NCBI GenBank assembly: GCA_038087875.1
Contig: CM076001.1
Coordinates: forward strand, 1,426,001 to 1,490,000
Direction: 5' to 3'
DNA: 64,000 nucleotides
Source of the DNA: Malacoraja senta
Lineage: Eukaryota
In this document: positions 3,001 through 44,869 of the stretch, piece after piece
Position numbering within the stretch: position 1 is the first letter of the stretch
Layout of the letters: each line of letters opens with the position of its first letter
Position numbers and translations under genes: made by a program
Notes under the pieces: model-generated
Databases searched by the model: none
Seen by the model: only the letters and a program-made list of their open reading frames with translations
What the model was told of the DNA's origin: nothing

Positions 3001-3759
3001 TCTTTGGAGTGGTACTGATTTGCCTTCTGCCTTGAACATAGCTTTTAGTTTCTGATTGGTTTATTGGGCAAATAGATGAAACGATACAAAACATACTAAC
3101 GAGGTGGTGACAACTAGGTCCTTTGTTCCATGCCGGCTTCTTTACATTCCCCAGAGGTTGCCATGAACAATTAAACAGGATAACAAACATAAGGCTGTTT
3201 GATGAACACTATGCTGATGGAAGTGAAGGAGGAACATTTTGGCAGAATGTAATAACAAGGAATTGCAGATGCTGGGTTACACCAAAGAAAACACGAAATG
3301 CTGGAGTAACTCAGCGGGTCAGTCAGCATCTCTGGAGAATTCTCCAGACATTTCGAAGAAGCTGTGTAAACAATTACCGAACATAAAAGAATAGACTCCG
3401 CCGTGGAAACTAGCAATGTGAGTGCATATTTAGTGAGTGCATTGCGCATACCTATGCAAACATCAGGATCAATGTTTCCCTTCAGGTGGGGAACGTCAAA
3501 AGAAAACTGGTAGGGGATAAAAGACCAATGCATTAATGGTGTAATTTACTGATTGTTTCCTGGAGGCAGCTCACCATATTACCAGCACTTGTCAGAAATC
3601 TATGAATTCACTGCATGAGAATTTGGGGGAAGGAAGCCTAAAATCTTTATAGGGCAAAGTTCCCCACTCTCACGTCATTCTACGACAATTAGTTCCAATA
3701 TTTTTAGAGTAAATTATGTTTTGGTCAGCCATGACTTACAATCCATTTTTATTGTGGAA

Positions 3760-4570
3760 ACAGAAGAAACTGCAGATGCTGGAATCTTGAGGAAAACACA
3801 CAAAGTGCTGGAAGAACTCAGCAGGTCAGGCAGCACCAGTGGAGGGAATGAACAGATGGCATTTTGAGTCAGGACTCTTCTTCAGATTGATTGGAGTAGA
3901 GGGAACAAAGTGAGAGGTAGGGATGGGACTAATGCTGGAAAGTGTTAGGCGGATACTGCTGCGTGGGGTTTGATTAGCAGAGGGACAAAGCAAGTGATAG
4001 AGGTGAAAAAGAGATAAAGGGTGTCAGATAACAAGAGGATGTATGAAATGTAAAGCCAGAAGGAGGGTCATGGGTGGAAAGGGACAGGGAAGAGAGAAAA
4101 AAGGGGGAGAAAAAAGAGAATTGGAGGACTTGGGATGGGAGAAGAGCATATGAAGGAGGGAAATGTGGCAGGGAGACCAGGGTGGTGGGCAATGGTGGGA
4201 AAAATAGATGTGCAGTGCGATGGAGGGGCATGGTGAAAGAAACAGGAGCTAGGTGGGTATTACACAAAAATGGAGAATTCAATGTTCACACCATTGGGTT
4301 GTAAGCTACCCAATCGGAAAATTGGGTCCTGTACCTACAGATTTGCCTCACCCTGGCACTCGAGGAGCCCAATGATAGAAAGGTCAATATGGCCGTGGGA
4401 AGGGGAATTAAAATGATTAGCAACTGTGAGATACGACAAGTCTTAGAGGATAGTATGCAGATGTCCAGCGAAATTGTTACTTGCACCTCTGTCTAACCTG
4501 GAAAGGGGCACTGAAATCCCTGCCTGGAGATGAGAGAGGAAATTCAGAGAAAGGTATTACATCATGGAAG
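3760..4570 (-). mobile_element. Degenerate Penelope-like element (PLE) 3' portion
   Basis: Ends in the PLE 3' terminal motif (gaaactgcagatgctggaatcttgag...gtgctggaagaactcagc on +), followed by a purine-rich tract and decayed sequence resembling the endonuclease region of the PLE at 27145-28332. Boundaries approximate. Confidence 0.5.
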
Positions 4571-4677
4571 AAAACAGAAGGTGATGGTGGAAGGTAGACA
4601 AAAATGCTGGAGAAACTCCAATTTCTCCAGCATTTTTGTCTACCTTTGATTTTCCAGCATCTGCAGTTCCTTCTTAA

Positions 4678-5300
4678 CATAGAAACATAGAAAATAGGTG
4701 CAGGAGTAGGCCATTCGGCCCTTCGAGCCTGCACCGCCATTCAATATGATCATGGCTGATCATCCAACTCAGTATCCTGTACCTACCTTCTCTCCATATC
4801 CCCTGATCCCTTTAGCCACAAGGGCCACATCTAACTCCCTCTTAAATATAGCCAATGAACTGGCCTCAACTACCTTCTGTGGCAGAGAATTCCAGAGATT
4901 CACCACTCTCTGTGTGAAAAATGTTTTTCTCATCTCGGTCCTAAAAGACTTCCCCCTTATCCTTAAACTGTGACCCCTTGTTCTGGACTTCCCCAACATC
5001 GGGAACAATCTTCCTGCATCTAGCCTGTCCAACCCCTTAAGAATTTTGTAAGTTTCTATAAGATCCCCCCTCAATCTTCTAAGTTCTAGCGAGTATAAGC
5101 CAAGTCTATCCAGTCTTTCTTCATAAGACAGTCCTGACATCCCAGGAATCAGTCTGGTGAACCTTCTCTGCACTCCCTCTATGGCAATAATGTCCTTCCT
5201 CAGATTTGGAGACCAAAACTGTACGCAATACTCCAGGTGTGGTCTCACCAAGACCCTGTACAACTGCAGTAGAACCTCCCTGCTCCTATACTCAAATCCT
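4678..5300 (-). mobile_element. CR1 LINE 3' fragment (young subfamily)
   Basis: ORF 4769-5263 is the CR1 ORF2 C-terminus ([15 protein letters not shown]...RTRGHSLRI...FFTQRVVNLWNSLP); (CTATGTTT)n-type tail at 4678-4695. Confidence 0.92.
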
Positions 5301-6312
5301 TAAACGTGATGGTGGAGGTTGCTTCTCGGACTGGAGGCCTGTAACTAGTGATGTGCCTCAGGGTTCGGTGCTGGGCTCGTTACTATTTGTCATTTATATC
5401 AATGATTTGGATGAGAACATACACAGCAAGATTAGCAAGTTTGCAGATTATACAAAAGTAGGTGGATTTGCAGATTGTGAAGATGGTCGTGAAAAATTGC
5501 AGCAGCATCTTGATTGATTGACCAGGTGGGCTGAGGAATTGTTGATGGAATTGAATGCAGAGAAATGTGAGGTGTTGCATTTTGGGAAGTCTAACAGGAC
5601 CTACACAGTGAACAGTAGGTCTCTGTGTAGTGTTGTAGAGCAGAGGGATCATGTGCATAGCCCCCTGAAGGTGGTGTCACAGGTCGATCGGGTGGTCAAA
5701 AGGCTTTTGGCACATTGGCCTTCATCAGCCAGAGTATTGAGTATAGAAGTTGGGAGGTTGTATAAGACATTGGAGAGGCCCGCATTGTGTCCAGTTCTGG
5801 GCAACGTGTTATAGCAAAGATGTCAAGCTAGAAAAGGTACAGAGAAGATTTACGTGGATGTTGCCAGGACTAGAGGGTCTGAGCTATAGGCAGAGGTTGA
5901 ATAGGTTGGGACTCTATTCCTTGGAGCGCAGGAGGATGAGGAGTGATATTATAGAGGTGCATAAAATCATGAGAGGAGCAGATCAGGTAGATGCACAGAG
6001 TCTCGTGTCTAGAGTAGGTGAATCGAGGACAGGAGGACATAGGTTTAAGGTGAAGGGAAAAAGATTTAATAGGAATCTGAGGGGTAACATTTTCACACAA
6101 AAAGTAGTGGGGGTATGGAACAAGCTGCCAGAGGAGGTAGATGAGGGACTATCTCAACATTCAAGACACAGTTTGACAGGTACACGGATAGGACATGTTT
6201 GGAGGGATATGGACCAAATGCTGGCAGGTGGGACGTGTGACTGGGACATGTTGGCCGGTGTGGGCAAGTTGTGCCGAAGGGCCTCTTTCCACACTGTATC
6301 ACTCTGTGACTC
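5301..6312 (+). mobile_element. CR1 LINE 3' fragment, second subfamily, frameshifted
   Basis: RT motifs VPQGSVLG...LFVIYINDLD...SKFAD (5206-5517 frame) and C-terminal LEKVQRRFT...RTGGHRFKV (5750-6394). Confidence 0.88.
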
Positions 6313-6379
6313 TATGTCCTGCAGTTGCAGGGCTTTGGAAAGTGTGCAGAAAGTACCTGGGAAGGGGACGGGTTGGATA

Positions 6380-7540
6380 GTCAGGGATGAGTGAACTGAA
6401 GAGTTGCAGAGAGAATAGTCTCTGTGGAAAATGGGCAGGGGTGGAGACGGGAAGTTGTGTCTGGTAGTGGGATGACATTGAAGGTAGCAGAATTGTCAGA
6501 GAATGATGTGTTGGGTGCGGTGAAAGGTCAGGGCCAGGGGAACTCTTGTCCTTGTTCTACCGAGGGGGAGAGGGAGAGCAGAACTATGGGATACAGAGGA
6601 GACATGAGCGAGGGTTCCATTCTCAACAGCAGGGGGGAAACAACATTTATTGAAGAAAGTGAACACCTTGGATGTGCTGAGCGAAGATCCTCATCTTGGC
6701 CCATCAAGAACAGATATGGCAGAGGGGTAGAAGCTGAGAATAAGGGATGGCTTCCTTGCAAGATGCAGGGTGGAAGGAGGTGTAGTTTTGGTAGTAAGCG
6801 GGTTTACAGTAGATGTCAGTACATAGCCTGTCCTCTGTGATGGAGACAGAGAGATTGAGAAAGTGGTGAGAGATGTCACAAATAGTCCAAATGAATTTGA
6901 GGCCAGGGTGCAAGTTAGTAGTGAGGTTGATGAAATCAATGAGTTCTGCACTGCGTAAGAAGCAATCCTGATGTGGTCATCAATGTAGCGGAGAAAGGGT
7001 TGTGGATTGGCACTGGGGTACACAAGGAGTATTCAACATGACCAATGAAAAGACAGACATAGCTGGGCCCCATGTGAGTGGCCATGGCTACACCTTTGAC
7101 CTGAAGAAAGTGAAAGGAGTCAAATGAAAACTTGTTAAGGGTGAAGATAGACACAAAAGCTTGGAGTAACTCAGCGGGACAGGCAGCATCTCTGGAGAGA
7201 AGGAATGGGTGACGTTTCGGGTCGAGACCCTTCTCCAGTCTGAAGAAGAGTCTCGACCCAAAACGTCACCCATTCCTTCTCCGCAGAGATGCTGCCTGTC
7301 CCAGTGAGTTACTCCAGCTTTTTGTGTCTATCTTCGGTTCAAACCAGCATCTGCAGTTCCTACCTGCACATTGTTAAGGATGAAGACAAGTTCCGCCAGG
7401 TTGGTGAGAACTGATTGGGTCTCCATTCAAGGAAGAACTGGAGGGCCTTGAGGCCTTCCTGGTGGGGAATGTGGATGTAAGAGGAATGGAAGTGTAAAGA
7501 GAATGGATGTTCAAGAAAGATGAGACAAACACCTGTGCTC
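6380..7540 (-). mobile_element. Degenerate Penelope-like element, RT region
   Basis: Fragments QVKGVAMATHMGPSYVCLF, LRYIDD and TDIYCKP...HPASCKEAIPYSQ in minus-strand ORFs; interrupted by the insertion at 7148-7370. Confidence 0.72.
7143..7370. mobile_element. Palindromic PLE-terminus-derived insertion
   Basis: Imperfect inverted repeat 7143-7335; flanking direct repeat ttgttaagg(g/a)tgaaga at 7132-7147 and 7371-7386 (15/16), consistent with a target-site duplication. Confidence 0.75.
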
Positions 7541-7544
7541 TGTC

Positions 7545-7579
<35 letters not shown>

Positions 7580-10500
7580 TCTTTTATTGTCATTGCACAT
7601 AGGTGCAACGAGATTTGGTATGCAGCTTCCATCCGATAGTCATAACTTAAACAACTAATAAAATTTAGATACCCCGAGAAACATGATTTATATTTTAAAA
7701 AAGAACAGTAAACCAGTAAAACAGTCTAAAGTGCAAATAGGTCTGTACCGGCTCGATGTGCGACGTGACCATCCGAGGGAGACAGTTCATGGGGGTGGGG
7801 GGCACTCAGCAGGGCCGGTTCAGAGCAGCGATAGCTCTGGGGATGAAGCTGTTCCTGAGTCTGGAGGTGCGGGCGTAGAAGGCCTTGTAACGTCTGCCGG
7901 AAGGTAGGAGTTCGAACAGACTATTACAAGGGTGTGAGGAGTCTTTGTGGATGCTGACGGCCTTCCTGAGGCACCGTGTATAGTAGATGCCCTCCAAGGC
8001 TGGTAGCTGTGTCCCAATAATCTTCTGCGCCCTGTGGACGACGCGCTGAAGAGCTCTCCTCTCCGCCTCCGTGCAGCTGAGATACCACACAGAGATGCCA
8101 TGCGTTAGGATGCTCTCTGTGGTGCAGCGGTAGAAGGTTGTCAGTAACTGTTGGGGCAGACCAGTCCTTTTCAATGTTCTCAGGAAGAATAGTCGTTGCT
8201 GTGCCTTTTTGACCAGCGCAGCGGTGTTGGTGGACCGTGTGAGGTCCTCCAAAATATGTGTGCCAAGAAACCTAAGGCTGGACACTCTCTCCACACTGTC
8301 CCCGTTGATAGAGATTGGGGCGTATTCCCCATTATGTGTCCTCCTGAAGTTGATAATCAGCTCCTTGGTCTTGGAGTTTAAGAAGGAACTGCAGATGCTG
8401 GAAATCGAAGGTACACAAAAATGCTGGAGAAACTCCTTGGTCTTGGAGGTGTTTAGGGACAAGTTGTTACGTTAGCACCAGTCGGCCAGGTTCTGCACCT
8501 CCGCTCTGTAGTCTGTTTCATCACCGTTGGTGATCAGCCCGATCACCGTTGTGTCGTCTGCGAACTTGACAATGGTGTTGGTGTCGAATGCAGGAACACA
8601 GTCGTGTGTGAAGAGGGAGTAGAGCATGGGGCTCAGTACACAGCCCTGTGGTGTACCGGTGCTCAGGGTGATAGTGGAGGACAGGTGCGGGCCCAGTCTC
8701 ACTGCCTGCGGTCGCTCCGTCAGGAAATTCAGGATTCAGTCGCATATCGGCGAGCTGAGGCCTAGCTGGTGGAGTTTGGTGGTGAGCTTGGTGGGGATGA
8801 CCATATTGAAGGCAGAGCTATAGTCTATGAAGAGCATCCTCACGTACGTGCCCTGTCTTTCCAGGTGAGTCAGGACAGTGTGAAGGGCCAGAGAGATGGC
8901 ATCCTCTGTGGATCTATTTGCCCTGTATGCAAATTGATGTGAGTCCAGTGAGGCAGGGATGCTGGATTTGATGTGAGAGAGGACCAGCCTTTCAAAGCAC
9001 TTCATGAGTATTGGAGTTAGGGCAACCGGACGGAAGTCGTTCAGGTTGGTGACTTTAGACTTTTTCGGCACCGGCACTATGGCAGCTGTCTTCAGGCACT
9101 TGGGGACCGTTGCCAGAGAGAGAGACAGGTTAAAGATCCTCGTGAATACCTCAGCCAGCTGTACAGCACAGTCCTTTAGTACCCTTCCTTGGACTCCATC
9201 CGGGCCTGCAGCCCTGCGTGGATTGATCCTACGCAGAGTGCACTGTACCTCCTGAGTGCTCAGTGTTAAGACCTGTCCCTCCGACAGTTTCGAAGCGGGC
9301 AAAGAAGGTGTTTAGCTCGTTGGCCAGTGTGATATCACTGTGGGGGCAGGCGGGGCTGCTCTTGTAGTCAGTGATGTCCCTGACACCCTGCCACATGCTT
9401 CTGGTGTCCGCGGTATTGAAGTGGTCTTCCACCCTTTGCCTGTGGATGTCTTTGGCCTTTTTTATACCTTTGTTCAGGTTTGACCTGGCAGCAGTATGCT
9501 GAAGTGTTACTGGATTTAAAGGCATTGTTGCGTGCCCTTAGCAGATTCTGTACCTCCTTGTTCATCCACGGTTTCCGGTTTGGGAACATCTTTATTTTCT
9601 TGTCCACTGTGACAGACTCCACACAGCAGTTGATGTAGGAGAGCACAGTGGATGTGTACTCCTCCAAGTCTACCTCTGTACCACTGGTAGCCTGTTGTGC
9701 AAACAGGTCCCAGTCGGTGCGATCAAAGCCGTCCTGGAGTTGTACGGTGGCGTCCTCGGGCCATATTTTGACCGTCCTTATTGCAGGTTTGGTCTTGCGG
9801 ATGAGGGGTTCGTATGCAGGCAGTAGAAACAGTGAGAGGTGATCGGATTGTCCCAGGGATGGGCAGGGGAGAGCTCTGTATGCGTCCTTGATGTTGGTGT
9901 ACACTTTATCCAGCGTGTTTGAGCCCCTGGTGGGGCACTGCACAATGCTGGTGGAATTTGCGGAGTGTAGCTCGTAGGTCGACCTGATTAAAGTCTCCTG
10001 CAACAATGAAGGCACAGTCGAGGTGAGTATCCTGCTGCTTACTGATGGCCGAGTGCAGCTGTGCTAACGCTAGATTAGCATTAGCCTGTGGTGGAATTTA
10101 TACGGCCATGATGATAACCACAGTATACTCCCGAGGCAGATAAAATGGCCTACATTTAAGCAGTAGGTATTCCAGTTCTGGGGAACAGTAGCTCTCTACT
10201 GCAGTGTGGTTGGTGCACCAGTCATTGTTGATATAGATACAGAGCCCGCCGCCCTTGCTCTTACCGGAGTCCTTTGTTCTATCAGCACGATGCAGTGACC
10301 GGTTCGTTAGCTCCACAGCCCCGTCAGGAACCAGCGCACTGAGCCACATCTCCGTGAAGATCAGCACACAGCAGTCTTTCAGGGATCGCTGGGTGTTGAT
10401 CCAGAGCCTTACCTCATCCAGCTTGTTGGTGAGTGACCGGACATTTGCGAGAAAGACGCTTGGTAGCGATGGTCTTTGCGGAGCCCTCCGTAGCCTGTCC

Positions 10501-10714
10501 TGCACCCCGCTCGCCTTCCACATTTCTGCTTTCTCTCCCGGCGCTTGCTCCGTCTCCTACCCTCCGTAGTGATGATCCAGGGGGACCTGATTAAAGATCA
10601 GATCGTAGGTCGACCTGATTAAAGTCCCCTGCAACAATGAAGGCACCGTCGGGGTGAGCATCCTGCTGCTTACTGATGGCCGAGTGCAGCTATGCTAGCG
10701 CTAGATTAGCATTA
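7545..10714 (-). mobile_element. Rex1/Babar-clade LINE, frameshifted, near full ORF
   Basis: APE motifs (FLANVRSL, LIFTEMWL, SDHLSL), RT motifs ([38 protein letters not shown]) and Rex-type C-terminus in ORFs 10098-10523, 9368-10015, 8736-9302, 8472-8702, 7806-8462; AATAAA at 7583-7588 on the minus strand and ~11 TAA/TTA tail units from 7545. Confidence 0.9.
8377..8432 (-). mobile_element. 56-bp PLE 3'-end insertion into the Rex element
   Basis: Flanked by exact 16-bp direct repeat ctccttggtcttggag (8361-8376, 8433-8448); the insert matches the PLE terminal sequence found elsewhere in the window. Confidence 0.85.
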
Positions 10715-10729
10715 CCAAGGCCCGTTGGA

Positions 10730-11270
10730 TCTCACGTTTGCAAACTACTTTAACTCACCTTCCCATTCCCTTACTAACCTTTCTGTCCTTGGCCTCCACA
10801 ATTTCCAGAGTGAGGCCACACCAAACTGGAGAAACAGCCCCTTACTGTATATTCTGCTTGTAGCTTGTAACCCCAGGGTACGAATAATAAATTCTCCAAG
10901 TTCAAGTCCTCTCCCTTCCCTCTCTTTACCGTGTCTTCCTCCACCCAGATGTGCTTCTATTTCTCCCACCATCTATCCCCCCACCACTCCGCCAGTCACC
11001 CAGCTTTTCTCCCCTCTTTCGTATGCTCATCTTCTATCCCCAGTTCCCCATTTCCATTTTAATCCCCCTTCTTTCCTCTCCTGTATTCCTCGCTCCTGCT
11101 TTACATTTCACTCCTCCACATTTCCTGTTTTCTGACTCCCGTTTTGTCTCCTTTTCACCTGTATCTTTTGTCACTTACTCCACCCATGTGCCAAACAAAC
11201 CTCACCTCTATCCACCTATCCAGGCCTTGTTCTGCCCCCCACCTCTCTTTCCACAGATGCTGCCTGATTT
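10730..11270 (+). mobile_element. Degenerate PLE 3' fragment
   Basis: FANYFNSPSHSLTNLSVLGLH matches the C-terminus of the PLE ORF at 27355-28095 (AQHFNSPSHSVSDLSVLGLLH); followed by a pyrimidine-rich tract. Confidence 0.75.
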
Positions 11271-11519
11271 TTTGACACTTTCTGTTTTGCTACTTTTGCA
11301 ATGATGAGCCTAACCATAGATCAAATGCAATGAAGTTCCCTAAGTAGATCTTTCTTCAGTTCAAATTGAGATAGATGTTTTGTGTAGTCTGTGGGCATTA
11401 ATATTATGTTCACAGTCCGTTATTGATATTCCACGTCACTAAAAGGAATGAGACTGAAAATCTCAACTAAACACCCAGCACTGTTCAAAGACCTCATAGA
11501 AATATCTGAATATCCTTTA

Positions 11520-11603
11520 TACATAATAAGATTAGCATCATTTATTGGGATATTGCCATTATGTAGACTGTATCCCAATAAATGATGCTAATCTTATTAT
11601 GTA
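11520..11603. repeat. Perfect 33-bp inverted repeat with 18-nt spacer
   Basis: 11520-11552 tacataataagattagcatcatttattgggata is the exact reverse complement of 11571-11603. Confidence 0.95.
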
Positions 11604-12292
11604 GGGAGTCAAGGAAAGAGCGTTCACGTCACGGCCCTGTTTTCATCAATCTTTCCACCACCACGTACAAGAAACACAAGAAGCACAAGACAGATACCAT
11701 TGTGTGCAGATGCTGAGAAGTGTGTTCAGTTCTGGCTGAACAACTTCTAATTTTGATGTGGACTAGATAAGAAGAAGATTGTAGCAAATCATAGAAAATG
11801 GGATGTTTACAGTATGTCAAAAATAAAATCCAGCTGTTTTTTCATGTGACCAGATTTAAGATAACTAATCACTGAGTACAATAGAGGAGATACACAAATC
11901 TGCAGATGCTGGTTAAAATAAAGAAACAAAGTGCTGGAGTAACTCAGTGGGTCAGGCAGAATTTCTGGAGAACACGGATCGGTGATGTTTTGGATCAACC
12001 TGAAACATCACTTATCAGTCTGAACAATGGGTCTCGACCTGAAACGTCACCTATCCACCCTATCCATGTTCTCCAGTGATGTTGACTGACCCACTGAGTT
12101 ACTCCAGCATTTGTGTATTTTTTTACCATGTACAAAACAGCTCTGTTTCTACTTTGTGAGTCTCTGCTATACTCTTCACTATGGAGGGTATAATACACCT
12201 TATACCATATCTTCAAATCTCTCACAATCCTCCCACAGTTATACAAATGTCACTCTTGGAAGAGAACAGGGACCACTTGGGGTTTCTTATTT

Positions 12293-12492
12293 NNNNNNNN
12301 NNNNNNNNNNNNNNNNNNNNNNNNNNNNNNNNNNNNNNNNNNNNNNNNNNNNNNNNNNNNNNNNNNNNNNNNNNNNNNNNNNNNNNNNNNNNNNNNNNNN
12401 NNNNNNNNNNNNNNNNNNNNNNNNNNNNNNNNNNNNNNNNNNNNNNNNNNNNNNNNNNNNNNNNNNNNNNNNNNNNNNNNNNNNNNNNNNNN
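12293..12492. other. Assembly gap (200 N, probably arbitrary size)
   Basis: Run of exactly 200 N; base composition differs on the two sides. Confidence 0.98.
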
Positions 12493-15471: not shown

Positions 15472-15777
15472 ATTCCATTTCCGCGGGTTCCCAGAGCCCG
15501 CCACAACAATCCTCTCTTGCTGGTGACACTGTCTCTCTTAACTGCGTATATTCCGGATTCTGTTCGTACACAGTACACTGGTACCGACATTTCCCAGGGC
15601 AAGCTCTGGAATTCCTGCTCCAAAGACACACCTCAGGAAAGCAAGATGAGGAAGAGGCTGCCGAAGGCCGCATTACTGGTTCTCTCGATCCTGGCCAGAA
15701 AATCAGCCAGTTAACGCTATCTGAAATGCTGCCGGGCGACGCGGCTGTGTATTACTGTGGGATGAGTCCGCGCATCG
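15472..15777 (+). CDS. Leaderless supporting TCR-delta V segment (NAR-TCR supporting V), copy 1
   Basis: Phase-1 acceptor ttctgcag|at; open frame (D)SISAGSQSPPQQSSLAGDTVSLNCVYSGFCSYTVHWYRHFPGQALEFLL...QLTLSEMLPGDAAVYYCGMSPRIA with both canonical Cys, Trp, an extra CDR1 Cys and a 3' RSS; no leader exon seen immediately upstream. Confidence 0.9.
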
Positions 15778-34735: not shown

Positions 34736-36786
34736 AGACTTGGGAGACAACGCAGTCAGTGTCTGCGGACATCACTTAACGATTCTGCGCAAACGGGACT
34801 TCTGTCGCGTGTGTTGCTGACTAATCGCTCTCGTTTGGGCTCCTTCTTACATTAAATTGCAGCTGATGATCTTGAGAAGCAATACTTTATATTTTTCAAT
34901 TTGATAGGGCGTCTATGAAAAGCTATTATTTTAAAATAACATTATTATTTTCACTCCATACGCTCATAAAATCAGAAGACCATAGGTGATAGGAGCACTA
35001 TTAGGCCATTCGGCCTATCAAATCTACTCCGGCATTCAATACAATACAATAAAATAATACTCTATTAGCGAAGTATTGTTTGCAGCATGCGAGGAATTTC
35101 ATTTGCCAAGTCAGTCATACAAATAATATAAAAAGCAACACAACAAACCAAATACATTTTAACATCAACATCCATCACAGTGACTCTTCCACATTCCTCA
35201 TTGTAATGAAGGTAAAACCAAAAGTTAAATCTCTTCTCTTCTTTGTCCTCCAGCGGTCGGGGGCCTCTAACCGTTGATGGGAAGATCTTACTCCTATTGC
35301 TGGCGGCGGGCCTTCCTCGACAGGCCGATCAGCTCCTGCATCGGTGGGGAATCTCAGTTACCCCGCGCCGGCGCTCTGACCTCGGGTCTAGGCTTGTCGA
35401 ACGTTGTGCGGCTTCCGGAGCTTCCTGACTCGGTCTCTCCAGAGACTACGAGCCCTTGATATTAAAGTCTACAGGCCGCGGTTGGAGCGTCGATCCAAGG
35501 CAATTCCTCTAAACTCCAGCGAGCACAGACCCGTGCCGTTAAGCGCTGATTATATGTTCACCCATTCCTCCCTTCCCTCTCCAAGGCCAGCACAGCCTTC
35601 ATCAGATGTGTTGCCCAAACCTTCTCACAATATCTCACTCGCATTTCCCAGGACATTTCTCGATTTGCAGCTCTACCCACGTTACAAAGCACAACTGCTT
35701 TAATATTACGTGTAGGAAATAACTGCAAATGCTGATGTAAATCGAAGGTAAACATAATATGCTGGAATAACTCGGCGGGCCAGGCAGCATCTCCGGGGAG
35801 AAGGAATGGGTGACGTTTCGGGTCGAGACCCTTCTTCGGTCTCTAGACTCTTCAGGTATGAATAATGTTTTTCCGATCAGTTTCCCCAAAACGTCGGTAA
35901 CCTGAGCATTCTGGGACTTTCGGCCCATCAGGCTGGTCCGCATTTCTATTTGATCACGGCCGATATCCCCCTTCTTCCACGTATCACTGGATCCCCCGAG
36001 CCCCAGGAACAGCATGTATATCCGTTTGAACATACTAAATGGTACGTTCTTCACTTTGTATCCATATTCGCACCAATTTATCATCTACATTGGCCTTGAC
36101 TATAGGAATAACACTATAAAATTATTGTTGGGAAACTGAGAAAACTGCAGATGCTGCATTACAAAAAAATAATGCACAGAATGCTGGAGTAACTCAACGG
36201 GTCAGGCAGAATATCTGGAGAACATGGATGTGGTTTCAGTTCGGGGCTGTTCTTCTGACTGATTGTGGTGAGGGGGAGAGGAGAACAGTCGAAGGAGAGG
36301 AGGGTTAGGGTAAAGCCTGGCCATATTTAAGGGGACACAGGAGAGAATGGGGGTTGATAGGCAACTAGTTGGATAAAGCCCAGAGATACACAATAGACAA
36401 TAGACAATAGACAATAGGTGAAGGAACAGGCCATTTGGCCCTTCGAGACATATTTTTTTCGGACTGGTTGCCTGCGACTGGTTGTGTGCCTCAAGGATCA
36501 GTTCTGGGCCCATTGCTGTTTGACATTTTTTATCGACGTTTTGGATGAGAATGTAGAAGGCATGGATAGAACGTTTAAAGATGACACCACGGTAGGTGGA
36601 GTCGTAGAGAGCGAAGATGATTCTCTAAAGCCACCGGAGGGTCTTGATCAGTTCAACAAGTGTGCCTAGCAATGGTTGTTGGATTTTAATGAAGATAAGT
36701 GAGAGGTTTTCTTTTTTGGGAAGTCAAACAGGGCAGGAACTTTACGGCGAATAACAGTGCCGTGGTGAGCACTGCGGGGCCACGGA

Positions 36787-36834
36787 CTCCAACTTCCCGT
36801 CACGTCAACTATTATCCCTGAAAGAAAGTTGGAA
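36787..36834 (+). promoter_or_regulatory. Promoter homologous to the NAR-TCR V promoter (CRE-like CGTCACGTCA)
   Basis: 36787-36820 vs 39953-39986: 26/34 identical ungapped; CGTCACGT ends 30 nt before an ATG (27 nt in the NAR V gene). Confidence 0.7.
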
Positions 36835-36871
36835 ATGCTGCTTTCCTTCATATTTTGTGCATGTTTATTCC
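36835..36871 (+). pseudogene. Orphan V-gene leader exon (MLLSFIFCACLF), no intact V exon behind it
   Basis: ATG, 12 hydrophobic codons, phase-1 donor C|gtaagtacc (NAR V leader: C|gtgagtacc); only weak V-like remnants at 37148-37215. Confidence 0.62.
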
Positions 36872-37974
36872 GTAAGTACCTTTAAGACAAAAGTTAGGTG
36901 AACTGAAGACAACTTTGTTTTCCACATGTTCTGTGATTTGTCTGTAATATTCACAACGTTCGTGAAATTTCCGAAATGTCCGGGAGTAGTCCTTACAATC
37001 GGCCTGGCGACTGGAGCTCCTAACATCCATGGACTCCTCGAGTGCAATCTGTTTAGAGTTGTGTGTACTTGCTGAGGAATTCAATCTGGAAAATGAGGTA
37101 GGGCAGGATATTTAACATGTGCGAAATTGTGTTTTTATTCTTAGCAGATAATTCAATCTGCTGTCTACCATGGTCGTCTCCCGAGACCTTGCTGGGTTTA
37201 ATCACAATCACAGCCAATGGGGGCTGTGAACTAAAGGACCCATTGTGGAAAAATCTATTGTTGCAACAACACGATGCAGCGCTTAAAGGCCTTGGTTTGG
37301 CCGCATTTGTAGCGTTGCCTACAGTTCCCATCGCATTATTGATGGAAAAGCGTGGAGGTTTTGGTTTGGATGCAGGCTAGGATTACCAGAATACTAGTTG
37401 GAAGGAACTGAAGCTGCTGGTTTAAACCGAAGATTGTGTATCTCTAGCGCTATACCCATAATACTACTTGGATTAAAGGGTGCTAACTTTCATGATAGTT
37501 GGGGCAGAGTTGGCTTGTTTCCCATGGATTGTTAGGGACTCCGATCTGATTAAAGTATATGAACTTATGAGAGATATGGAAAGTGTAGGCATTCAGAACG
37601 GTTTTTTCATTCCCACGGCAGAATTATTAAAAACTAGATGCCCTAACATTAAGGTGAAGGGGGCAACACGCAAACGATATGTACGGGTTATCTACGGAGA
37701 GAGCGGTAAGTACATGGGACCTGCTGCCGGGGATGGTGATAGAGGCGATACGACAGTGGCTTTTAAGAGGCTTTGAGATAAACACACGGACATGCACGGA
37801 AAGGAGAGATATGAGTGATTTACAGGAGATACGATCAGTTGAGCTTTGCATCGTGTTCGGCACAGACATTGTTGGCTGAACGGCTTGTTCCGATTCTGCC
37901 CGTATCTCTGTTCTATGTTATCCTTCGCAGCTGATCTTTTCTGAAACAAGGAGCAACATTATGTAAAAGTATGT

Positions 37975-38960
37975 TTGTCCGCATGTCGAAACGTTCTATT
38001 TGTTCGGTGTAACTTGAACTTGATCTTAATTTCAACTGTTTCTGCCTTCAAGGCACCCACATTTGCCTTTACTAATCTTTTTCTCTTAACATACCTAAAT
38101 AAGCTTTACTGCCCTTTAAATACCTGGCGAACTTACGTTCGTACTTCATCTTTTCACCCCGTATTGCCCTTTGTGTTACATTCTGATGTCCTTTGAAAGT
38201 TTCCCAATCCTCCGGCTTCGCACCACTCTTTTCTATGTTATACATCTTTTCTTCTATTTTTATACCGTCCCCAACTTCCTTTGTCATCCACGGTTGCCTC
38301 TTACTCCCCTTAGATTTTTTCTTTATCCTTGGAGTGAAATGATCCTGCATCTTCTGTATTAGGCCCAGAAATTCCTGCCATTGTTGTTCCTCCGTCATTC
38401 CTGCTAGGATCATTTTCCAGTCGACCTTGGCCCGCTCCTCTCTCATGCCGTTATAGTCCGTTTTGTTCAACTGCAACACTGACAATTCTGATTTAACCTT
38501 CTCCCTCTCAAATTGCAGATTAAAACTTATCATATTATGGTCACTCCCTCCTAGCGATTCCTTTACCTTGAGTTCCCTTACTAAATCTGTTCCATTAGAC
38601 AACACTAAATCCAGAGTTGCCTTCTCTCTGGTAATTTCCAATACAAGCTGCTTGAAGAATCCGTCTCTACAAACTCGCTTTCTTGGGTTCCTGACCCAAC
38701 CTGATTTCTCCAGTCAACGTGCATTTTGAAAACTCCCTAATAACAGTGGCATTAAATTTGTTACATGGCAATTTTAACTCCTGCTGCAACTTGCACCCTA
38801 TGTCCAGGCCACGTTTTGGGGGCCTGCAGATAATTTCGATTGTCGTCTTACCTTTACAATTCCTCAATTCAATCCACAGCGACTTTACATCGTCAGTCCC
38901 TCTGTTACCCCTCCGAATTGACTGAAATTCATCCCTCAACAACAGAACTACCCCACCTCA
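37975..38960 (-). mobile_element. CR1 ORF2 endonuclease/linker fragment
   Basis: SLWIELRN, LDLVLSN, GGSDHNMISF motifs in ORFs 38667-38942 and 38072-38641. Confidence 0.85.
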
Positions 38961-39209
38961 TCTGCGACCTGCCTTGATCATAATGAATTGCCGTGCTGGA
39001 TCGAAGGGAGAGTGGCTTACTCCTACACCTATTTTCTATGTTTCTATGTTTCCCCATCCCTGCAGGTGAATGAATTAATTACAATCTGTGCGTTCCCTTT
39101 CACCGGCTCGTTGACATTCGGAGGGAACCCGGTACCCAGCCCGACTATCGTCGATCTTATAAGCCGCGGTGCAGCAATTCCCACTATCTTTGGCCGTGCA
39201 GCTTCTCAT

Positions 39210-39250
39210 CAAACAAACAAACAAACAAACAAACAAACAAACAAACAAAC
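39210..39250. repeat. (CAAA)10 microsatellite
   Basis: Direct reading. Confidence 0.97.
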
Positions 39251-39952
39251 ATACCTTGCATCGGCCTTCCTCCATTATTGCGGAGTTGCACAGAGGAGCA
39301 ACAGCCTCTGTTGACAAAACACCTGCCCCATCCGTTCAGTATAGTTTATTGTCACGTATACCAAGGTACAGAGAGAAACTTTGTTGCGTACTAACCATTC
39401 AGCGCAGAGACAATACATGGTAACAATCGAGCCATTCACAGTGTACAGATACATGCGCAGGGAATACAGTTTAGTGCAAGATAAAGCCAGCAAAGTTCGA
39501 TAAGGTTAGTCCGATGGTCAGCGATGAGGCAGATAGTATGGCAGGACTGCTCTCTGGTGGTGGTAGGATGGTTCAGTTGCCTGATAAGCGCTGGGAAGAA
39601 TCTGTCCCTGAATCTGGAGGTTTGAGTTTACACACTTCTATATCTTCTGCCTGATTGGAGAGGGAACTGTGCCTTCACCCTAACTACTACCCCCATATGA
39701 TCAGTTGCCTGAATGGTTGAAATGGTCTACCGAACGTCAGAGAAACGTCAGAGCCACATCAGATGCTTCACATCAGATTCCAGGCCACGAAACAAACCAG
39801 CAGATTTGACGATCCCCTTCTCAAACTCTCACTCTCCTCGCACATCGATTTTCAAAAATTCCCAGAGCACCGCCCGCAACGAAACGAAAAGGCCAGCTGA
39901 GGTTCCCGCTCAGTGCGTCTGGACAGGTGCAGGATCAGTCGGGGGACCTGGG

Positions 39953-39997
39953 CTCCAGCCTCTCGTCACGTAAACCATTTTTCCCGGAGAACGCGCG
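39953..39997 (+). promoter_or_regulatory. NAR-TCR V proximal promoter with CRE-like CGTCACGT
   Basis: CGTCACGT at 39964-39971, 27 nt before the leader ATG; conserved with 36787-36820. CRE-type elements are known in TCR V promoters. Confidence 0.6.
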
Positions 39998-40487
39998 ATG
40001 GGAATCCTCCTGTTTTTTGTGTTGTCACTCTGCTTGCGCCGTGAGTACCAGTCCCCTACTCCCACACAGTGCGGGTTGAACATAAAACAACTCGAGTCCA
40101 CTCCGACCTGAATTTCCAACTCTGTCCGCGATTTATCCTTCTTCCGTGGTTCGCCTCGAATTCCCACTCACCTCACCCTGTGTTTCATCTACAGACACCT
40201 TCAGTCAGTCAGTGACCCAGAGCCCGAATGCGGTGACTGGAAAAGAGTGTCAACCCGTCACCATCACATGCCTTTTCCAAGAAGGTTCCTGGGGTAGCTA
40301 CATACTTGATGTAGGACGTTTCTTCAAGCAAGCACAAACCGGTGCTGAACGGCAGCGGATCACAACAGGTGGAGGGGTCGTTGTGTCGACCAAAAAAGCG
40401 GAAAAGACCTTTACGTTGAAAATTCGTGGTTTGAGAGTTGAGGACATGGCCACATATCACTGTCAAGCTGAGTACAGATGGAGAGAG
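39998..40487 (+). CDS. NAR-TCR V gene (IgNAR-like V): leader + V exon
   Basis: join(39998..40040,40195..40487): MGILLFFVLSLCLRHTFS-QSVTQSPNAVTGKECQPVTITCLFQEGSWGSYILDVGRFFKQAQTGAERQRITTGGGVVVSTKKAEKTFTLKIRGLRVEDMATYHCQAEYRWRE. FR2-to-second-Cys spacing matches a recalled VNAR sequence (CDR2 deleted); extra FR1 Cys; GT-AG phase-1 intron. Confidence 0.88.
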
Positions 40488-40525
40488 CACAGTGATGGGC
40501 CTGCGGTTCCAGCAATACAAAAACC
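40488..40525 (+). other. 22-bp-spacer RSS of NAR-TCR V
   Basis: CACAGTG + 22 nt + ACAAAAACC (perfect heptamer and nonamer). Confidence 0.95.
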
Positions 40526-40847
40526 CTGACGGCAGATTCTAGTACAAACGTGAAGACGCGAGGTGAATCCACCGGGTAACCCACGGTACCGTTTTGTCCC
40601 GGCTGCCCTGCATTTTAGGTTGTAACGGATGAAATGCGTGCTATTCAACAATGGGGTTTCCCTATTTGGCGAGTGCGGCTGGATAATGCCCCCTTTACCG
40701 AAAACGGTGTAACCGAACTGCCATCCAGAATGACTTACCGATCTTCTAATGCACAACTCCAGACGGGATCTAGTTACAGAAGCTGCAATCCGAAAAATGC
40801 ATTCGCTGAACGTTAATCTCCTGCCCGCCCGTCTCGCCGGACGCCTG

Positions 40848-40918
40848 GGGATTTGTAACTGGCGTGAAACAACGTGTGGCAATGGGTATCCACAGTGGAA
40901 GAGAGTCGAGTAAAAACT
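40848..40918 (+). other. NAR-TCR D segment (40877-40890) with flanking 12/13-bp and 12-bp RSS
   Basis: GGGATTTGT + 13 nt + CAACGTG | tggcaatgggtatc | CACAGTG + 12 nt + GTAAAAACT. All three D frames are open (WQWV, GNGY, AMGI). The 5' RSS is degenerate. Confidence 0.8.
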
Positions 40919-41218
40919 CACCCCATTCAAGATATATGTCCTTGGGTTCCGGAACCAAAATCAAACGATTGTTGTTCGTGACGCTGTAGTCCAGTTAAAT
41001 TGCATAGGGATTACCACATTCCGTTAACATTCCTTAATAATTGGTTCTGTGTTTGTAAAAGCACACCAGGAGCTCACTCTGCTCTTAGCTCTGTTTCTTA
41101 GCGGGAGCCGGTCGACCCACCGAGGATTGGGGAGCAAGGACAATTACTGGTTGGTCTGAAACTCCTGTAATAATTGGACAGCGATTCTTATGGTTGCCGG
41201 GCAAATCGTGGTGAGAAC

Positions 41219-41257
41219 TGTTCTTGTACTGCGAGCATCGAGAGACGGGGCACTGTG
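41219..41257 (-). other. 23-bp-spacer RSS of NAR-TCR J
   Basis: TGTTCTTGT + 23 nt + CACTGTG on the + strand. Confidence 0.88.
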
Positions 41258-41315
41258 CCTTCATGGCCCACTTACTATCAGGATGGGACGGGGACTACGG
41301 TGACTTTCACAGCCG
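41258..41315 (+). CDS. NAR-TCR J segment
   Basis: PSWPTYYQDGTGTTVTFTA + phase-1 donor G|gtaagt; DGxGT motif is IgNAR-J-like; splices in frame to the acceptor at 44564. Confidence 0.88.
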
Positions 41316-44300
41316 GTAAGTACCGTAAACCTCTCTTATCCATGGCTATTCTTGTAAATATTCAGTTCCCTTTAATATTGGATCATGAGGCATCAATTGG
41401 TTTACAATTGAAACAGATTCTATTGATAAAGTGTTCCAGCAACTTGGTCCAGATGTTACGGTACACGTGAGTCCAAGGAGAGGATATGTCGGGCTCCCCG
41501 GGAGCACAAGGTTAATCAGGTTCAAGAATAGCTACTTCCCCAAAACCACCAAGATCGGGAACACCACACAGTGCTAACCACTCCTATGAATTTCTACGCA
41601 GACACAAGTAAATGCGGACGCTGAAATCGGAATCTGAAGTCTAGATACCAAATGTCGGCTATCAATGTTCTCCTGAAATGGTGCCAGACCCGCGCAGTTA
41701 ATGCTACCACCAAACTGCCGGCTTGCTCCAAAACACTATGCGAATTCACCCTCTTGGTCTACAAGTTACTGCAACACTTTGTGTTCATAAACATTTCATA
41801 ATTGTCTCTGGTTATACAAAGGATTTGTTTTTTTTGTTGCTCTAGGATTGTGGCCATTAAGTTATTGAGTTAGTTTGTGTATCATACATTATGAGAGGAA
41901 TGGGGTGATCGCACGGAAGTGTATAAAATCATGGGAAGAATAGATCGGGTAGATACGCAGAGTCTCTTGTGCAGAGTAGGTGAGTCGAGGAACGGAGGAC
42001 ACAGGTTTAAGCTGAAGGGGAAGATTAATACGATTTGAGCGGTAACGTTTTCACACGGAGGGTAGTGGGTGTACAGAACAAGTTGCCAGAGTAAATAGTT
42101 GAAGCTGGCACTAACCCACTGTTTAAGAATCAGTTAGACTATACATGGACAGGACCAAACGCGGGCAGGTGGCACAAATGTAGCTTTGACATGTTGGCCG
42201 GTGTGGGCAACGTGGGCCGACGAGCCTGTTTCCGCATTATATCGCTACATGACTCTATGACTCTGTTATCTGAAAAAGCATATTGCATTTCTAGGCCTGT
42301 GTGCATCTACAAGTAAGAATGTCATGTTCCGTTGTCGGAACAGAATATATTTGAACACCCTGGAATCGTTACTGTTGATTCTAACGGGCAATGACTGTTG
42401 GCCGTAACAGCTATGCCCACATCCAAAACAAAGACAAAGACGATAAGGTATAGATGCAGAGTTAGGCCATTTGCCCAAATTGAAAGCCGCCGTTGGAAGT
42501 TAAAACGAAAAGTGCGTGGGTGAAGTCTGCGGTATGTAGCAAGGATCAATTCAGAGAAAAGAGGGAAAGTATCCGAGTTTGGAGCGTGAGGGCGAAATGC
42601 CGATGACAATGCTGCTCAAATCTCAATCAGAGTGATCAGAGTGATCAGAACTTATCCTTCTCAAGTCCAGCGTGTGTAGGCTTGGAGATAGCAAACGCTT
42701 CTTATGCGCGACCGAATGATCCCCCAAATAATTCGCGTAAACCTCCGCTTGGCAATCTCCAAAGCCACCATATCCTTCCTTAGATACGGGACCCAAAACT
42801 GCTCGCGATATTCCAAATGTGATCACATCAGTGCCTAAAAAAACATCTACGATTTACATTTTAGCTTCCTGTTTTTATATTCAAGTCATCTCGAGATTAA
42901 TGCTAAAATTTAATTTGTCTCCCTGAACGACGATTCGCTCTGCAAATTCACATTTTGGAATTCCCGCACCAACATTCCCAAGTCCCTTTGCACCTCCATT
43001 TCTGAATCCTCTCGCCATTTGGAAAATAGTCGACGTCGTCATTCCCTCCGCCAAAGTGCATGTCCGTATAGTGTGCTGTGTCGTATTTCATCTGCCACTT
43101 ATTTGCCCCCCTCTTCCAACCTGTTCAAATAACTCTGGAGACTCCATGCTTACTCAACACTACCTGCCCCTTCACCTATTTTGGCATCGTCCACGATATC
43201 AGCCGCAAAGCCATCAATTCCATCACCCAGATCGTAAACATACAACGGAAAAAGGAGTGGACCCAACATTGACCCATTAGTCACAGGCAGCAAGCGGAAA
43301 AGATCACTTTTATTCCAATATTTTGCCCTGCAACGGACAGCCTGTCCTCTATCCACACTGATACCTTATCTCTAACACCGATACTCCTATCTTAATTAGC
43401 CGCTTCGCGTCCTGCACCGTTTAATATGCATCAGAAATTTTAAGTCAGCAGCATTTGTGACTTTACTTTGTCCATCGTACTTGTTACGTTTACAAATAAT
43501 TTCAACAGTTTTGTCAGGCAAAAGCCCCCACCAGCTGACTTCGCCGATTTTATCGTGTGCTTGAAGGTAACTGGAACCTCATTTTTACTAATGGTCTCTA
43601 AAATCTTACCAACTATTGAAGTCGTGCTACCCGCCTTATCATTACAACGGGCTTATAAATTTCCCCATACAATTTATGGGATTAATCCACGACCGCTGCG
43701 TGCGAAAGCCAGGGAAACAATCTATTTCTTATTTCCAGGAAACAGATGGAGGTTTTGCAGGAGAGTAGATGGGCTGCGAGTGAAACTGGACCCTCTGTAA
43801 ACATTCCACAAACTGTAATCAAACGACAGCTGGCAGACCTGTTGAAACGGTTCTCGGGAGATGAAAATATGACCCGCAAGCAGCAAAAAGCGGGCGAACA
43901 AGATTGAAAACCAAAACTGTTCTTCAATGAAATGAAAGTAAAACGCAGACGGACGTGGCCCAGTGAAGAAAAAACAACAACTCTTAATACATAAAGGGCA
44001 AAGTATTTATCCCGGGTTGTGTATATTGCACTTAAAAGATGACCTTCCAGTTGCTAAACACAGAAGGCTGTGGAGGCCAAGTCAGGGGCGAAAATAAGGC
44101 AGCGATAGATAGATTTTTGATTAGTCGAGGCGTCAGAGGTTATTGTTATTGCGGAGATTTTCTGCTTGGGTTTTGATCCGAGATCTAGGGTTTCTTCCCA
44201 CACTCCAAATACGGAGAGTTTTGAAGGGCAATTGGCTTTCTATAACTGTAAATTATCCATCTTGTGTGTGGGATAGTGTTAATGTGCGGGGATTGCAGGG

Positions 44301-44563: not shown

Positions 44564-44869
44564 ATTCCATTTCCGCGGGTTCCCAGAGTCCGCCTCAACA
44601 ATCCTCTCTTTCTGGTGACACTGTCTCTCTTAACTGCGTATATTCCGGATTCTGTTCGTACACAGTACACTGGTTCCGACATTTCCCAGGGCAGGCTCTG
44701 GAATTCCTGCTCCAAAGACACACTTCAGGAAAGCAAGATGAGGAAGAGGCTGCCGAAGGCCGCATTACTGGTTCTCTCGATCCTGGCCAGAAAATCAGCC
44801 AGTTAACGGTATCTGAAATGCTGCCGGGCGACGCGGCTGTGTATTACTGTGGGATGAGTCCGCGCATCG
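44564..44869 (+). CDS. Leaderless supporting TCR-delta V segment, copy 2
   Basis: Acceptor ttctgcag|at; intact frame SISAGSQSPPQQSSLSGDTVSLNCVYSGFCSYTVHWFRH...DAAVYYCGMSPRIA; CDR1 Cys; 7 nt differences from copy 1. Confidence 0.9.

What the first reader, a model, noticed from the sequence alone, without database searches (positions are those of the whole stretch)
36787..37240. Orphan NAR-V-type promoter and intact leader exon 3.2 kb upstream of the cassette
The promoter is 26/34 identical to the NAR V promoter and is followed by ATG, a hydrophobic 12-codon frame and a canonical phase-1 donor. The expected V exon is only a trace (acceptor at 37147; atcacaatcacagcc resembling gtcaccatcacatgcc) running into CR1-like debris. 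The donor is in phase with both downstream acceptors: to 40195 it gives MLLSFIFCACLFHTFS-QSVTQ; to 44564 it gives MLLSFIFCACLFHSISA-GSQSP, which would supply the 'leaderless' supporting V with a signal peptide and allow a single-V delta chain. Possible roles: remnant of a dead NAR V, germline-transcription promoter, or alternative first exon.
Basis: partly seen in the sequence, partly recalled or inferred. Interest (0 to 1): 0.75.

Follow-up and report, generated by a model that had tools for sequence, protein, structure and literature searches.

The report
Stranded V-gene promoter and leader relic
About 130 bases upstream of a skate NAR-TCR gene cassette are a genuine but very old copy of that gene's core promoter, signal-peptide exon and splice donor; the V exon is gone and the block is hemmed in by LINE debris, so it is most likely an ordinary gene relic, and its use in transcripts could not be tested.

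Summary
The core observation holds. Window 36757-36884 is homologous to the 5' end of the NAR-TCR V gene at 39923-40054. The local alignment has z=13 with 0 of 1000 shuffles reaching it. A profile of five skate NAR V genes gives E=7e-7. The orphan used alone as query finds NAR V 5' ends in two other skate species.

It is the only hydrophobic ATG-to-phase-1-GTRAGT exon in the window apart from the real NAR V leader. Both predicted in-frame fusions read as stated.

Three qualifications apply:
- The ancestral ATG is TTG here, and the ATG now present lies two codons downstream.
- The "V exon trace" is no better than chance and has no V-set signal, and no RSS follows.
- Homology stops about 72 nt upstream of the old start codon and about 13 nt past the donor. 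The block sits between two same-strand pieces of one decayed CR1-like LINE.

Five NAR V genes in four fetched loci of Leucoraja erinacea and Amblyraja radiata have no such block nearby. Depth in whole-genome runs suggests only a fraction of units carry it.

No RNA run could be obtained, so promoter activity and the proposed splices remain untested. Verdict: a V-gene 5' relic, an ordinary kind of debris in antigen-receptor loci, that stayed functional long after it diverged from NAR V. Use as an alternative leader is not excluded but unlikely.

The parts
36456..36757 (+). Left piece of a decayed CR1-like LINE ORF2 (reverse transcriptase, FSDW...VPQGSVLGPLLF...FGKSNR). A weak protein-level continuation reaches 36771.
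   Evidence: 70.8% identical to the LINE copy at 5323-5598. tblastn and the LINE protein HMM give E=4e-6. The DNA HMM of 8 LINE copies from the window hits 36664-36738, envelope to 36757. About 9000-fold word depth in whole-genome runs.
36757..36828 (+). Homolog of the NAR-TCR V core promoter and 5'UTR. The best ungapped stretch is 36776-36813. It contains a CRE-like CGTCACGTCA at 36798-36807.
   Evidence: 29/38 ungapped. Promoter-only alignment z=10.7, 0 of 1000 shuffles. nhmmer envelope 36757-36884, E=7e-7. Not LINE-like (p=0.055 and 0.98).
36829..36871 (+). Leader-exon homolog, 43 nt, the same length as the NAR V leader exon. TTG at 36829 aligns with the NAR ATG. The ATG at 36835 opens MLLSFIFCACLF plus 1 base (phase 1).
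   Evidence: Collinear with no net indel, 23/43 identical. One of only two hydrophobic ATG...phase-1 GTRAGT exons in 128 kb of both strands; the other is the true NAR V leader.
36872..36884 (+). Splice donor GTAAGTACC. Detectable homology ends here.
   Evidence: CCGTAAGTACC against CCGTGAGTACC, 10 of 11. The nhmmer hit ends at 36880, envelope 36884.
36885..37246 (+). Low-copy sequence with no detectable relative.
   Evidence: No significant similarity to the NAR V intron (p=0.078) or V exon (p=0.70). No Pfam V-set. Not LINE (p=0.31). No blastn match of 36700-37300 in L001-L004, and nhmmer with the block finds nothing further in L005-L007. Low depth in whole-genome runs.
37247..37900 (+). Right piece of the same LINE family, same strand, resuming about 165 LINE positions after the left piece stops (..LKALVWPHL*..VQARITRIL..LGLFP..SDLIKVYELMR..). 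The 3' limit is approximate.
   Evidence: The DNA HMM hits 37268-37395, envelope from 37247, E=1.8e-8. Protein matches at 37461-37686. Translation.
39923..40054 (+). Comparator: 5' end of the functional-looking NAR-TCR V gene (promoter, ATG 39998, leader exon to 40040, donor GTGAGT at 40041).
   Evidence: It is 89-92% identical to four NAR V 5' ends of Leucoraja erinacea and Amblyraja radiata.
40195..40480 (+). NAR V exon, the first candidate acceptor, followed by an RSS at 40488.
   Evidence: V-set E=4.5e-7. RSS control. Frame check.
44564..44868 (+). Leaderless supporting TCR-delta V exon, the second candidate acceptor.
   Evidence: V-set E=3.6e-12. Acceptor and frame. Supporting delta V genes lack a leader according to PMC1845163.

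Best explanation
The block at 36757-36884 is the stranded 5' end of a V gene: core promoter, first leader exon and splice donor. That gene was an old paralog of the NAR-TCR V gene.

Inferred history: the gene worked for a long time after it split from the NAR V lineage. Only the functionally constrained parts are still alignable, namely the CRE-like promoter core, a hydrophobic open leader and the donor. It then lost its V exon and RSS and everything upstream of about -72, through LINE-associated breakage or insertion.

Today it is most likely inert, or at most weakly transcribed DNA, carried along in some of the ~29-kb NAR-TCR repeat units.

Shown here: the homology, the limits of the block, the absence of a V exon and RSS, the LINE flanks, and the absence from other units. 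Inferred: the order of events and the present lack of function.
For: Homology:
- z=13.3 and E=7e-7 with the five-gene profile.
- The orphan alone finds NAR V 5' ends in L001, L003 and L004, E=1e-4 to 1e-2.

Old origin and past constraint:
- NAR V 5' ends of three species are 89-92% identical to each other. The orphan matches them at about 75% with gaps, and at 23/43 in the exon.
- Under neutral drift to 47% exon divergence, an open hydrophobic leader with a GTRAGT donor survives in only 0.2% of simulations. After 5-15% drift it survives in 18-58%.
- So the exon was selected for most of its history, but its intactness now does not require present function.

Loss of the gene body:
- No V-set signal.
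- No similarity to the V exon or intron.
- No RSS.
- No other V exon anywhere in the window.

LINE context:
- Two collinear LINE pieces abut the region.
- In Amblyraja radiata a LINE of the same family sits between a NAR V promoter and its leader, so LINE damage to these 5' ends does occur.

Not an obligatory part of the unit:
- Five NAR V genes in L001-L004 have no second block nearby. L001, L003 and L004 show none in the 2.4-8.2 kb between NAR V and the GPCR gene.
- Word depth over 36900-37299 is roughly 1-2x below that of the cassette in run X1 and 2-20x below in X8, X12 and X3.
Against: - No RNA data were available, so activity is not excluded.
- The block keeps exactly the parts a first exon needs: an A at -3 before the ATG, an open hydrophobic frame and a perfect GTAAGT.
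- Contigs of three other organisms hold parts of the region at 83-91% identity. One contig (X12) spans the LINE-left/orphan junction and beyond, and another spans the right LINE junction. The arrangement has therefore persisted.
- If the very decayed right-hand LINE piece is what destroyed the V exon, the leader has had perhaps 20-30% of neutral time. At that divergence intactness is expected in only about 2-10% of cases. This mildly favours continued constraint.
- How a V 5' end came to lie between collinear pieces of one LINE is unexplained.
Confidence: 0.62

Rival explanations
1. Alternative first exon. The orphan promoter fires in T cells and its leader is spliced to the NAR V exon (40195) or directly to the leaderless supporting delta V (44564). 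The second splice would give that V a signal peptide and allow a conventional single-V delta chain from a NAR-TCR unit.
For: Both fusions are in frame, with a plausible hydrophobic core and small residues before the predicted cleavage site. The donor is a perfect GTAAGT. Leader-like exons are very rare in the window, with only 2 hydrophobic ones in 128 kb. Intactness is somewhat unexpected if the exon has drifted for as long as the flanking LINE has.
Against: Phase 1 is general for Ig/TCR split leaders (general knowledge; the true NAR V leader here is also phase 1), so phase compatibility is expected by descent. The promoter is cut off at about -72, whereas NAR V genes share at least 270 nt more of conserved upstream sequence. 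Five NAR V genes in two other skates lack any such exon, and depth suggests most units elsewhere lack it. A transcript from here would have to skip the cassette's own promoter, leader and donor. No transcript evidence exists.
Confidence: 0.1
2. Non-coding germline (sterile) transcription promoter. The retained core promoter drives transcription through the cassette and helps open it for recombination. The leader reading frame is irrelevant.
For: The promoter core is the best conserved part, 36/47 against 23/43 in the exon. It keeps a CRE-like CGTCACGTCA. The same CGTCACG core also lies about 40 nt upstream of the ATG of a conventional V leader in Leucoraja erinacea (L005).
Against: The cassette has its own intact promoter 3.2 kb downstream. 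The block is absent from the other units examined. No transcription data exist. The motif argument rests on a short word and on recalled knowledge of TCR V promoters.
Confidence: 0.13
3. Filler DNA. The ~500 nt between the two LINE pieces was copied into a break inside one LINE element from a V gene 5' region by template switching or end-joining capture. On this reading it never belonged to a working gene at this site.
For: The two LINE pieces are on the same strand, in order, and only about 165 LINE positions apart (perhaps about 90), while 529 nt of foreign sequence lies between them. The LINE-to-block junction is sharp at about 36757.
Against: A copied genomic segment should resemble its source evenly. 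Here only the promoter, leader and donor resemble NAR V, and the next 360 nt resemble nothing. A source other than NAR V would have to be assumed. Two independent LINE insertions are also possible, because LINE 3' fragments are dense here, with at least 8 in the window.
Confidence: 0.1
4. Chance resemblance or LINE coding sequence. On this reading the 'promoter' and 'leader' are just the decayed ..VVEQRDLGVQVHSSLKV...GMLAFI.. part of the LINE ORF2 that surrounds them.
For: The expected LINE codons fall roughly here. TCCCTGAAAG (36816) resembles the LINE codons for SLK, and GGAAATGCTGCTTTCCTTCATA resembles GGAATGTTGGCCTTCATA for GMLAFI.
Against: The LINE protein HMM, the LINE DNA HMM and local alignment all fail in 36758-37246 (p=0.055 and 0.98). 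The NAR V alignment is overwhelming (z=13.3, E=7e-7) and is reproduced against other species. NAR V upstream regions show no LINE signal.
Confidence: 0.03

Closest known systems
NAR-TCR V gene 5' end (promoter and split leader) of skates, as in this window at 39923-40054 and in Leucoraja erinacea and Amblyraja radiata
   Same: Collinear core promoter with the CGTCACGT core. The leader exon is 43 nt counted from the aligned start codon. Phase-1 donor CCGTRAGTACC.
   Different: The ancestral ATG is now TTG. The exon is only 53% identical. No conserved far-upstream region, no recognisable intron, no V exon, no RSS, no D or J.
V-gene relics and truncated V pseudogenes in immunoglobulin and T-cell receptor loci
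   Same: A fragment of a V gene left in a repeated antigen-receptor array, broken by transposable elements and co-amplified with its neighbours.
   Different: Here the surviving piece is only the 5' module, and it is still formally usable: ATG, open frame and perfect donor. I did not find such solo leader modules described for NAR-TCR in the papers I could reach.
Germline promoters upstream of rearranging segments (for example TEA upstream of J-alpha, from general knowledge)
   Same: A promoter upstream of unrearranged segments, with a first exon that could splice downstream.
   Different: No evidence of transcription here. It derives from a V promoter and is not present in every unit.
Leaderless supporting TCR-delta V of NAR-TCR (PMC1845163, citing Criscitiello et al. 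2006)
   Same: The orphan donor is in phase with this V's acceptor, so it could in principle supply the missing leader.
   Different: The orphan resembles the NAR V leader module, not the upstream regions of the four conventional V genes examined. No transcript links the orphan to the supporting V.

Membership tests
Functional germline Ig/TCR V gene | Promoter followed by a first leader exon that ends in a phase-1 splice donor | tested here: met
   ATG 36835, 12 codons plus 1 nt, GTAAGT at 36872. Promoter homology z=10.7.
Functional germline Ig/TCR V gene | V exon encoding a V-set domain after a short leader intron | tested here: not met
   No Pfam V-set in the frame after 37147, although both real V exons score. 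No DNA similarity (p=0.70). No tblastn V hit between 36872 and 40195.
Functional germline Ig/TCR V gene | Recombination signal sequence at the 3' end | tested here: not met
   No heptamer-spacer-nonamer in 36700-39900. The control RSS is found at 40488.
NAR-TCR V 5' module (paralog of) | Significant collinear similarity to NAR V promoter, leader and donor in several species | tested here: met
   z=13.3. Profile E=7e-7. The orphan-only query hits L001, L003 and L004 NAR V 5' ends at E=1e-4 to 1e-2.
NAR-TCR V 5' module (paralog of) | Start codon at the conserved position | tested here: not met
   The NAR ATG aligns with TTG at 36829. A replacement ATG lies 6 nt downstream, in frame.
CR1-like LINE fragment | Similarity to LINE ORF2 at the protein or DNA profile level | tested here: not met
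   Met only for the flanks 36456-36757 and 37247-37900. Not met for 36758-37246.
Used (transcribed and spliced) first exon | Transcription start and splice-junction reads | not testable with these tools
   The single run search returned no run identified as RNA. The four runs laid covered intergenic sequence and repeats throughout, as whole-genome data would.
Conserved component of the NAR-TCR repeat unit | Present next to NAR V cassettes in other units and species | tested here: inconclusive
   Absent near five NAR V genes of L. erinacea and A. radiata. Contigs at 83-91% identity exist in runs of other organisms, but at 2-20x lower depth than the cassette.

The most novel reading that the evidence does not exclude
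The orphan module is a live alternative first exon. In some NAR-TCR units, transcription from 36.8 kb and splicing 36871>44564 would give the otherwise leaderless supporting delta V its own signal peptide. One cassette could then yield either a three-domain NAR-TCR delta chain or a conventional two-domain delta chain.
Probability: 0.07. Interest if true: 0.75.

Novelty: new member of a known kind. Interest (0 to 1): 0.3.

Why it matters
As a relic it matters little. It adds one more piece of V-gene debris to a repeated antigen-receptor array, and it shows that LINE insertions break NAR V 5' ends.

It has some value for the history of the locus. The relic shows that a second, old lineage of NAR-V-type promoter and leader modules once existed and worked. 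It also marks which bases of the promoter (the CGTCACGT core) and of the donor have been held constant over a long time.

Only if transcripts show that the leader is used would it change how NAR-TCR units are thought to be expressed, in particular whether the supporting V can be used on its own.

Tried and rejected
1. My own first idea was that the block is simply LINE ORF2 sequence, because it lies between two collinear LINE pieces. I rejected it after building LINE protein and DNA profiles.
2. I considered that the NAR V promoter itself derives from that LINE. There is no LINE signal in 39500-40300.
3. The V-exon trace was rejected.
4. Protein searches meant to reach annotated skate V genes failed. 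The NAR V exon found nothing and the supporting V found only one elephant-shark protein.
5. An exact look-up of seven ORFs around the block found none in the collection.
6. The bacterial promoter/terminator scan was irrelevant to a vertebrate and is disregarded.
8. Criscitiello et al. 2006 (PMC1458790) and Ott et al. 2021 (PMC7909615) are not held in the library.
9. Upstream regions of four conventional V genes in L005 and L007 show no significant similarity to the orphan or to NAR V. The 'lost leader of the supporting or a conventional delta V' idea therefore has no support.
10. The paralogous copy expected about 1.4 kb beyond the window's end could not be read. The unit upstream is interrupted by the N gap at 12293-12492 and shows no counterpart.

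Full report
**Context.** The window is part of a tandem array of about 29-kb units. Positions 12493-35405 match 41543-64000 at 97-98%. It holds one complete NAR-TCR cassette:
- NAR V leader with ATG at 39998 and donor at 40041;
- V exon at 40195-40480, with an RSS at 40488;
- leaderless supporting delta V at 44564.

A second supporting V lies at 15474. Earlier notes of this scan call the genome a skate. My GPCR search agrees: the best relatives are Leucoraja erinacea and Amblyraja radiata at 77-82% identity, so the window comes from neither species.

- Without gaps, 36776-36813 matches 39942-39979 at 29 of 38.
- With gaps, the alignment runs 36754-36880 against 39923-40050. The score is 35 against a dinucleotide-shuffle mean of 10.3 (sd 1.9, z=13.3), and none of 1000 shuffles reaches it.
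- The promoter part alone gives z=10.7.
- I built a profile from five NAR V genes, each spanning 600 nt either side of the block: the window's gene and four from L. erinacea and A. radiata. It hits the orphan region once, at 36775-36880, E=7e-7.
- The orphan used alone as query finds the NAR V 5' ends in the other species, E=1e-4 to 1e-2.
- A scan of both strands of the window for ATG, then 10-21 open codons, then a phase-1 GTRAGT finds four cases. Two are hydrophilic LINE codons. The only hydrophobic ones are the true NAR V leader and the orphan.

**Qualifications.**
- In the alignment the NAR V ATG lies opposite TTG at 36829. The orphan's ATG at 36835 lies opposite NAR codon 3 (ATC).
- Counted from the aligned start, both exons are exactly 43 nt long. 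They are only 23/43 identical, whereas the donor CCGTRAGTACC matches at 10/11.
- The 'V exon trace' fails every test. It shows no similarity to the NAR V exon (p=0.70) or intron (p=0.078). The profile gives no hit there. Pfam V-set finds nothing, while both real V exons score. No RSS lies before 39900.

**Surroundings.** The block lies between two same-strand pieces of one CR1-like LINE family.
- The left piece is 36456-36757, running from ..VPQGSVLGPLLF.. to ..FGKSNR.
- The right piece is about 37247-37900, reading ..LKALVWPHL.. LGLFP.. SDLIKVYELMR...
- In LINE coordinates the two pieces are only about 165 positions apart, but 529 nt lie between them.

This made me suspect that the 'promoter and leader' were just LINE coding sequence. 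I tested this with reference ORF2 fragments from the protein library, a protein HMM, a DNA HMM of eight LINE copies from the window and local alignments. None supports it (p=0.31, 0.055 and 0.98). The NAR V upstream region shows no LINE signal either. The block is therefore foreign to the LINE.

How it came to lie between collinear LINE pieces is not resolved. It could be two independent LINE events, since at least eight LINE 3' fragments occur in this window. It could also be capture of copied DNA at a break inside one LINE.

**Age and selection.** NAR V 5' ends of three skate species are 89-92% identical to each other over the block. The orphan is about 75% identical with gaps and 53% in the exon. 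Homology ends sharply about 72 nt upstream of the old start codon and 13 nt after the donor. What remains alignable is what a first exon needs: the promoter core, an open hydrophobic frame and the donor.

A simple substitution simulation starting from the NAR V leader asks how often an in-frame ATG, an open hydrophobic frame and GTRAGT all survive:

| Divergence | Simulations still intact |
|---|---|
| 47% | 0.2% |
| 30% | 2.4% |
| 20% | 9.5% |
| 15% | 18% |
| 5% | 58% |

The module must therefore have been under selection for most of the time since it split from the NAR V lineage. It once served a working gene. Its present intactness is compatible with a moderate period of neutral drift and is not proof of present function.

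**Distribution.** I used the array's GPCR gene as a handle and fetched four loci from L. erinacea and A. radiata. Together they hold five NAR V genes and no second block. In L001, L003 and L004 the NAR V-to-GPCR interval is 2.4-8.2 kb, against 14.7 kb in the window. In L002 a LINE of the same family splits a NAR V promoter from its leader.

Contigs of four whole-genome runs from four organisms were laid on 35900-41899.
- In three organisms other than X1's, contigs match parts of the region at 83-91% identity. One X12 contig spans 36527-37113, covering the LINE-left junction, the orphan block and beyond. Another spans 37090-37366 across the right LINE junction.
- Depth over 36900-37299 equals that of the cassette only in the closest organism. 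It is 2-20 times lower in the others.
- At least five contigs of run X1 cover position 37125.

The segment is therefore multi-copy and older than at least one species split. It is carried by only some units.

**What could not be done.** The four runs laid covered intergenic sequence throughout, as whole-genome data would. The paralogous copy expected just beyond the window's end could not be read either.

**Conclusion.** The best explanation, at about 0.6, is a stranded 5' module of an old, once-functional NAR-V-type V gene whose body is lost. This is an ordinary kind of relic in an antigen-receptor array.

Present use is not excluded. A role as an alternative leader stands at about 0.1, and as a sterile promoter at about 0.13. 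Three points argue against present use:
- the promoter is truncated at about -72;
- the cassette has its own intact promoter and leader between the orphan and both acceptors;
- the module is absent from most units examined.

Phase compatibility with both acceptors is expected by descent and adds nothing.

Noticed in passing
L002:860-2211 (Amblyraja radiata CM021380.1, about 59.296 Mb): In this A. radiata NAR-TCR unit a 1.35-kb LINE of the same family, in antisense orientation, is inserted between the NAR V core promoter and its leader ATG. The V exon and supporting V look intact. The annotated V-set gene model there (283 aa) starts upstream of the fetched locus.
   Followed up: partly
window 12293-12492 and 1-12292: The unit that should precede the supporting V at 15474 has no NAR V in the assembled sequence. 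Homology with the next unit starts exactly after the 200-N gap. Positions 1-12292 share only repeats with 35400-41343. This could be an array boundary or an assembly break.
   Followed up: partly
L005:about 2160-2270 (- strand; Leucoraja erinacea JAMYXN010000269.1): A conventional V gene next to a more distant GPCR paralog has a leader (MKTQLAPLLIIALLL) preceded at about -40 by CCGTCACGGATGAC. This is the same CGTCACG core as in the NAR V and orphan promoters. It may be a general skate V-promoter motif.
   Followed up: no
window 36100-36450, 37400-37434, 38900-39100, 39300-39700: Extremely high-copy short repeats, SINE-like, with word depth 10^5-10^6 in all four whole-genome runs. The repeat at 37400-37434 interrupts the right-hand LINE piece.
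   Followed up: no
L003:17366-23251 (A. radiata): The annotated V-set gene model begins at 23251, inside the NAR V leader intron. It does not use the conserved leader exon at about 23383-23340. The public gene models of these cassettes are therefore not reliable evidence for which first exon is used.
   Followed up: partly
window 36623, 37125-37222, 37367-37459: At these sites all or most contigs of all four runs carry a base different from the window. These are private substitutions of this copy, or assembly or haplotype differences.
   Followed up: no
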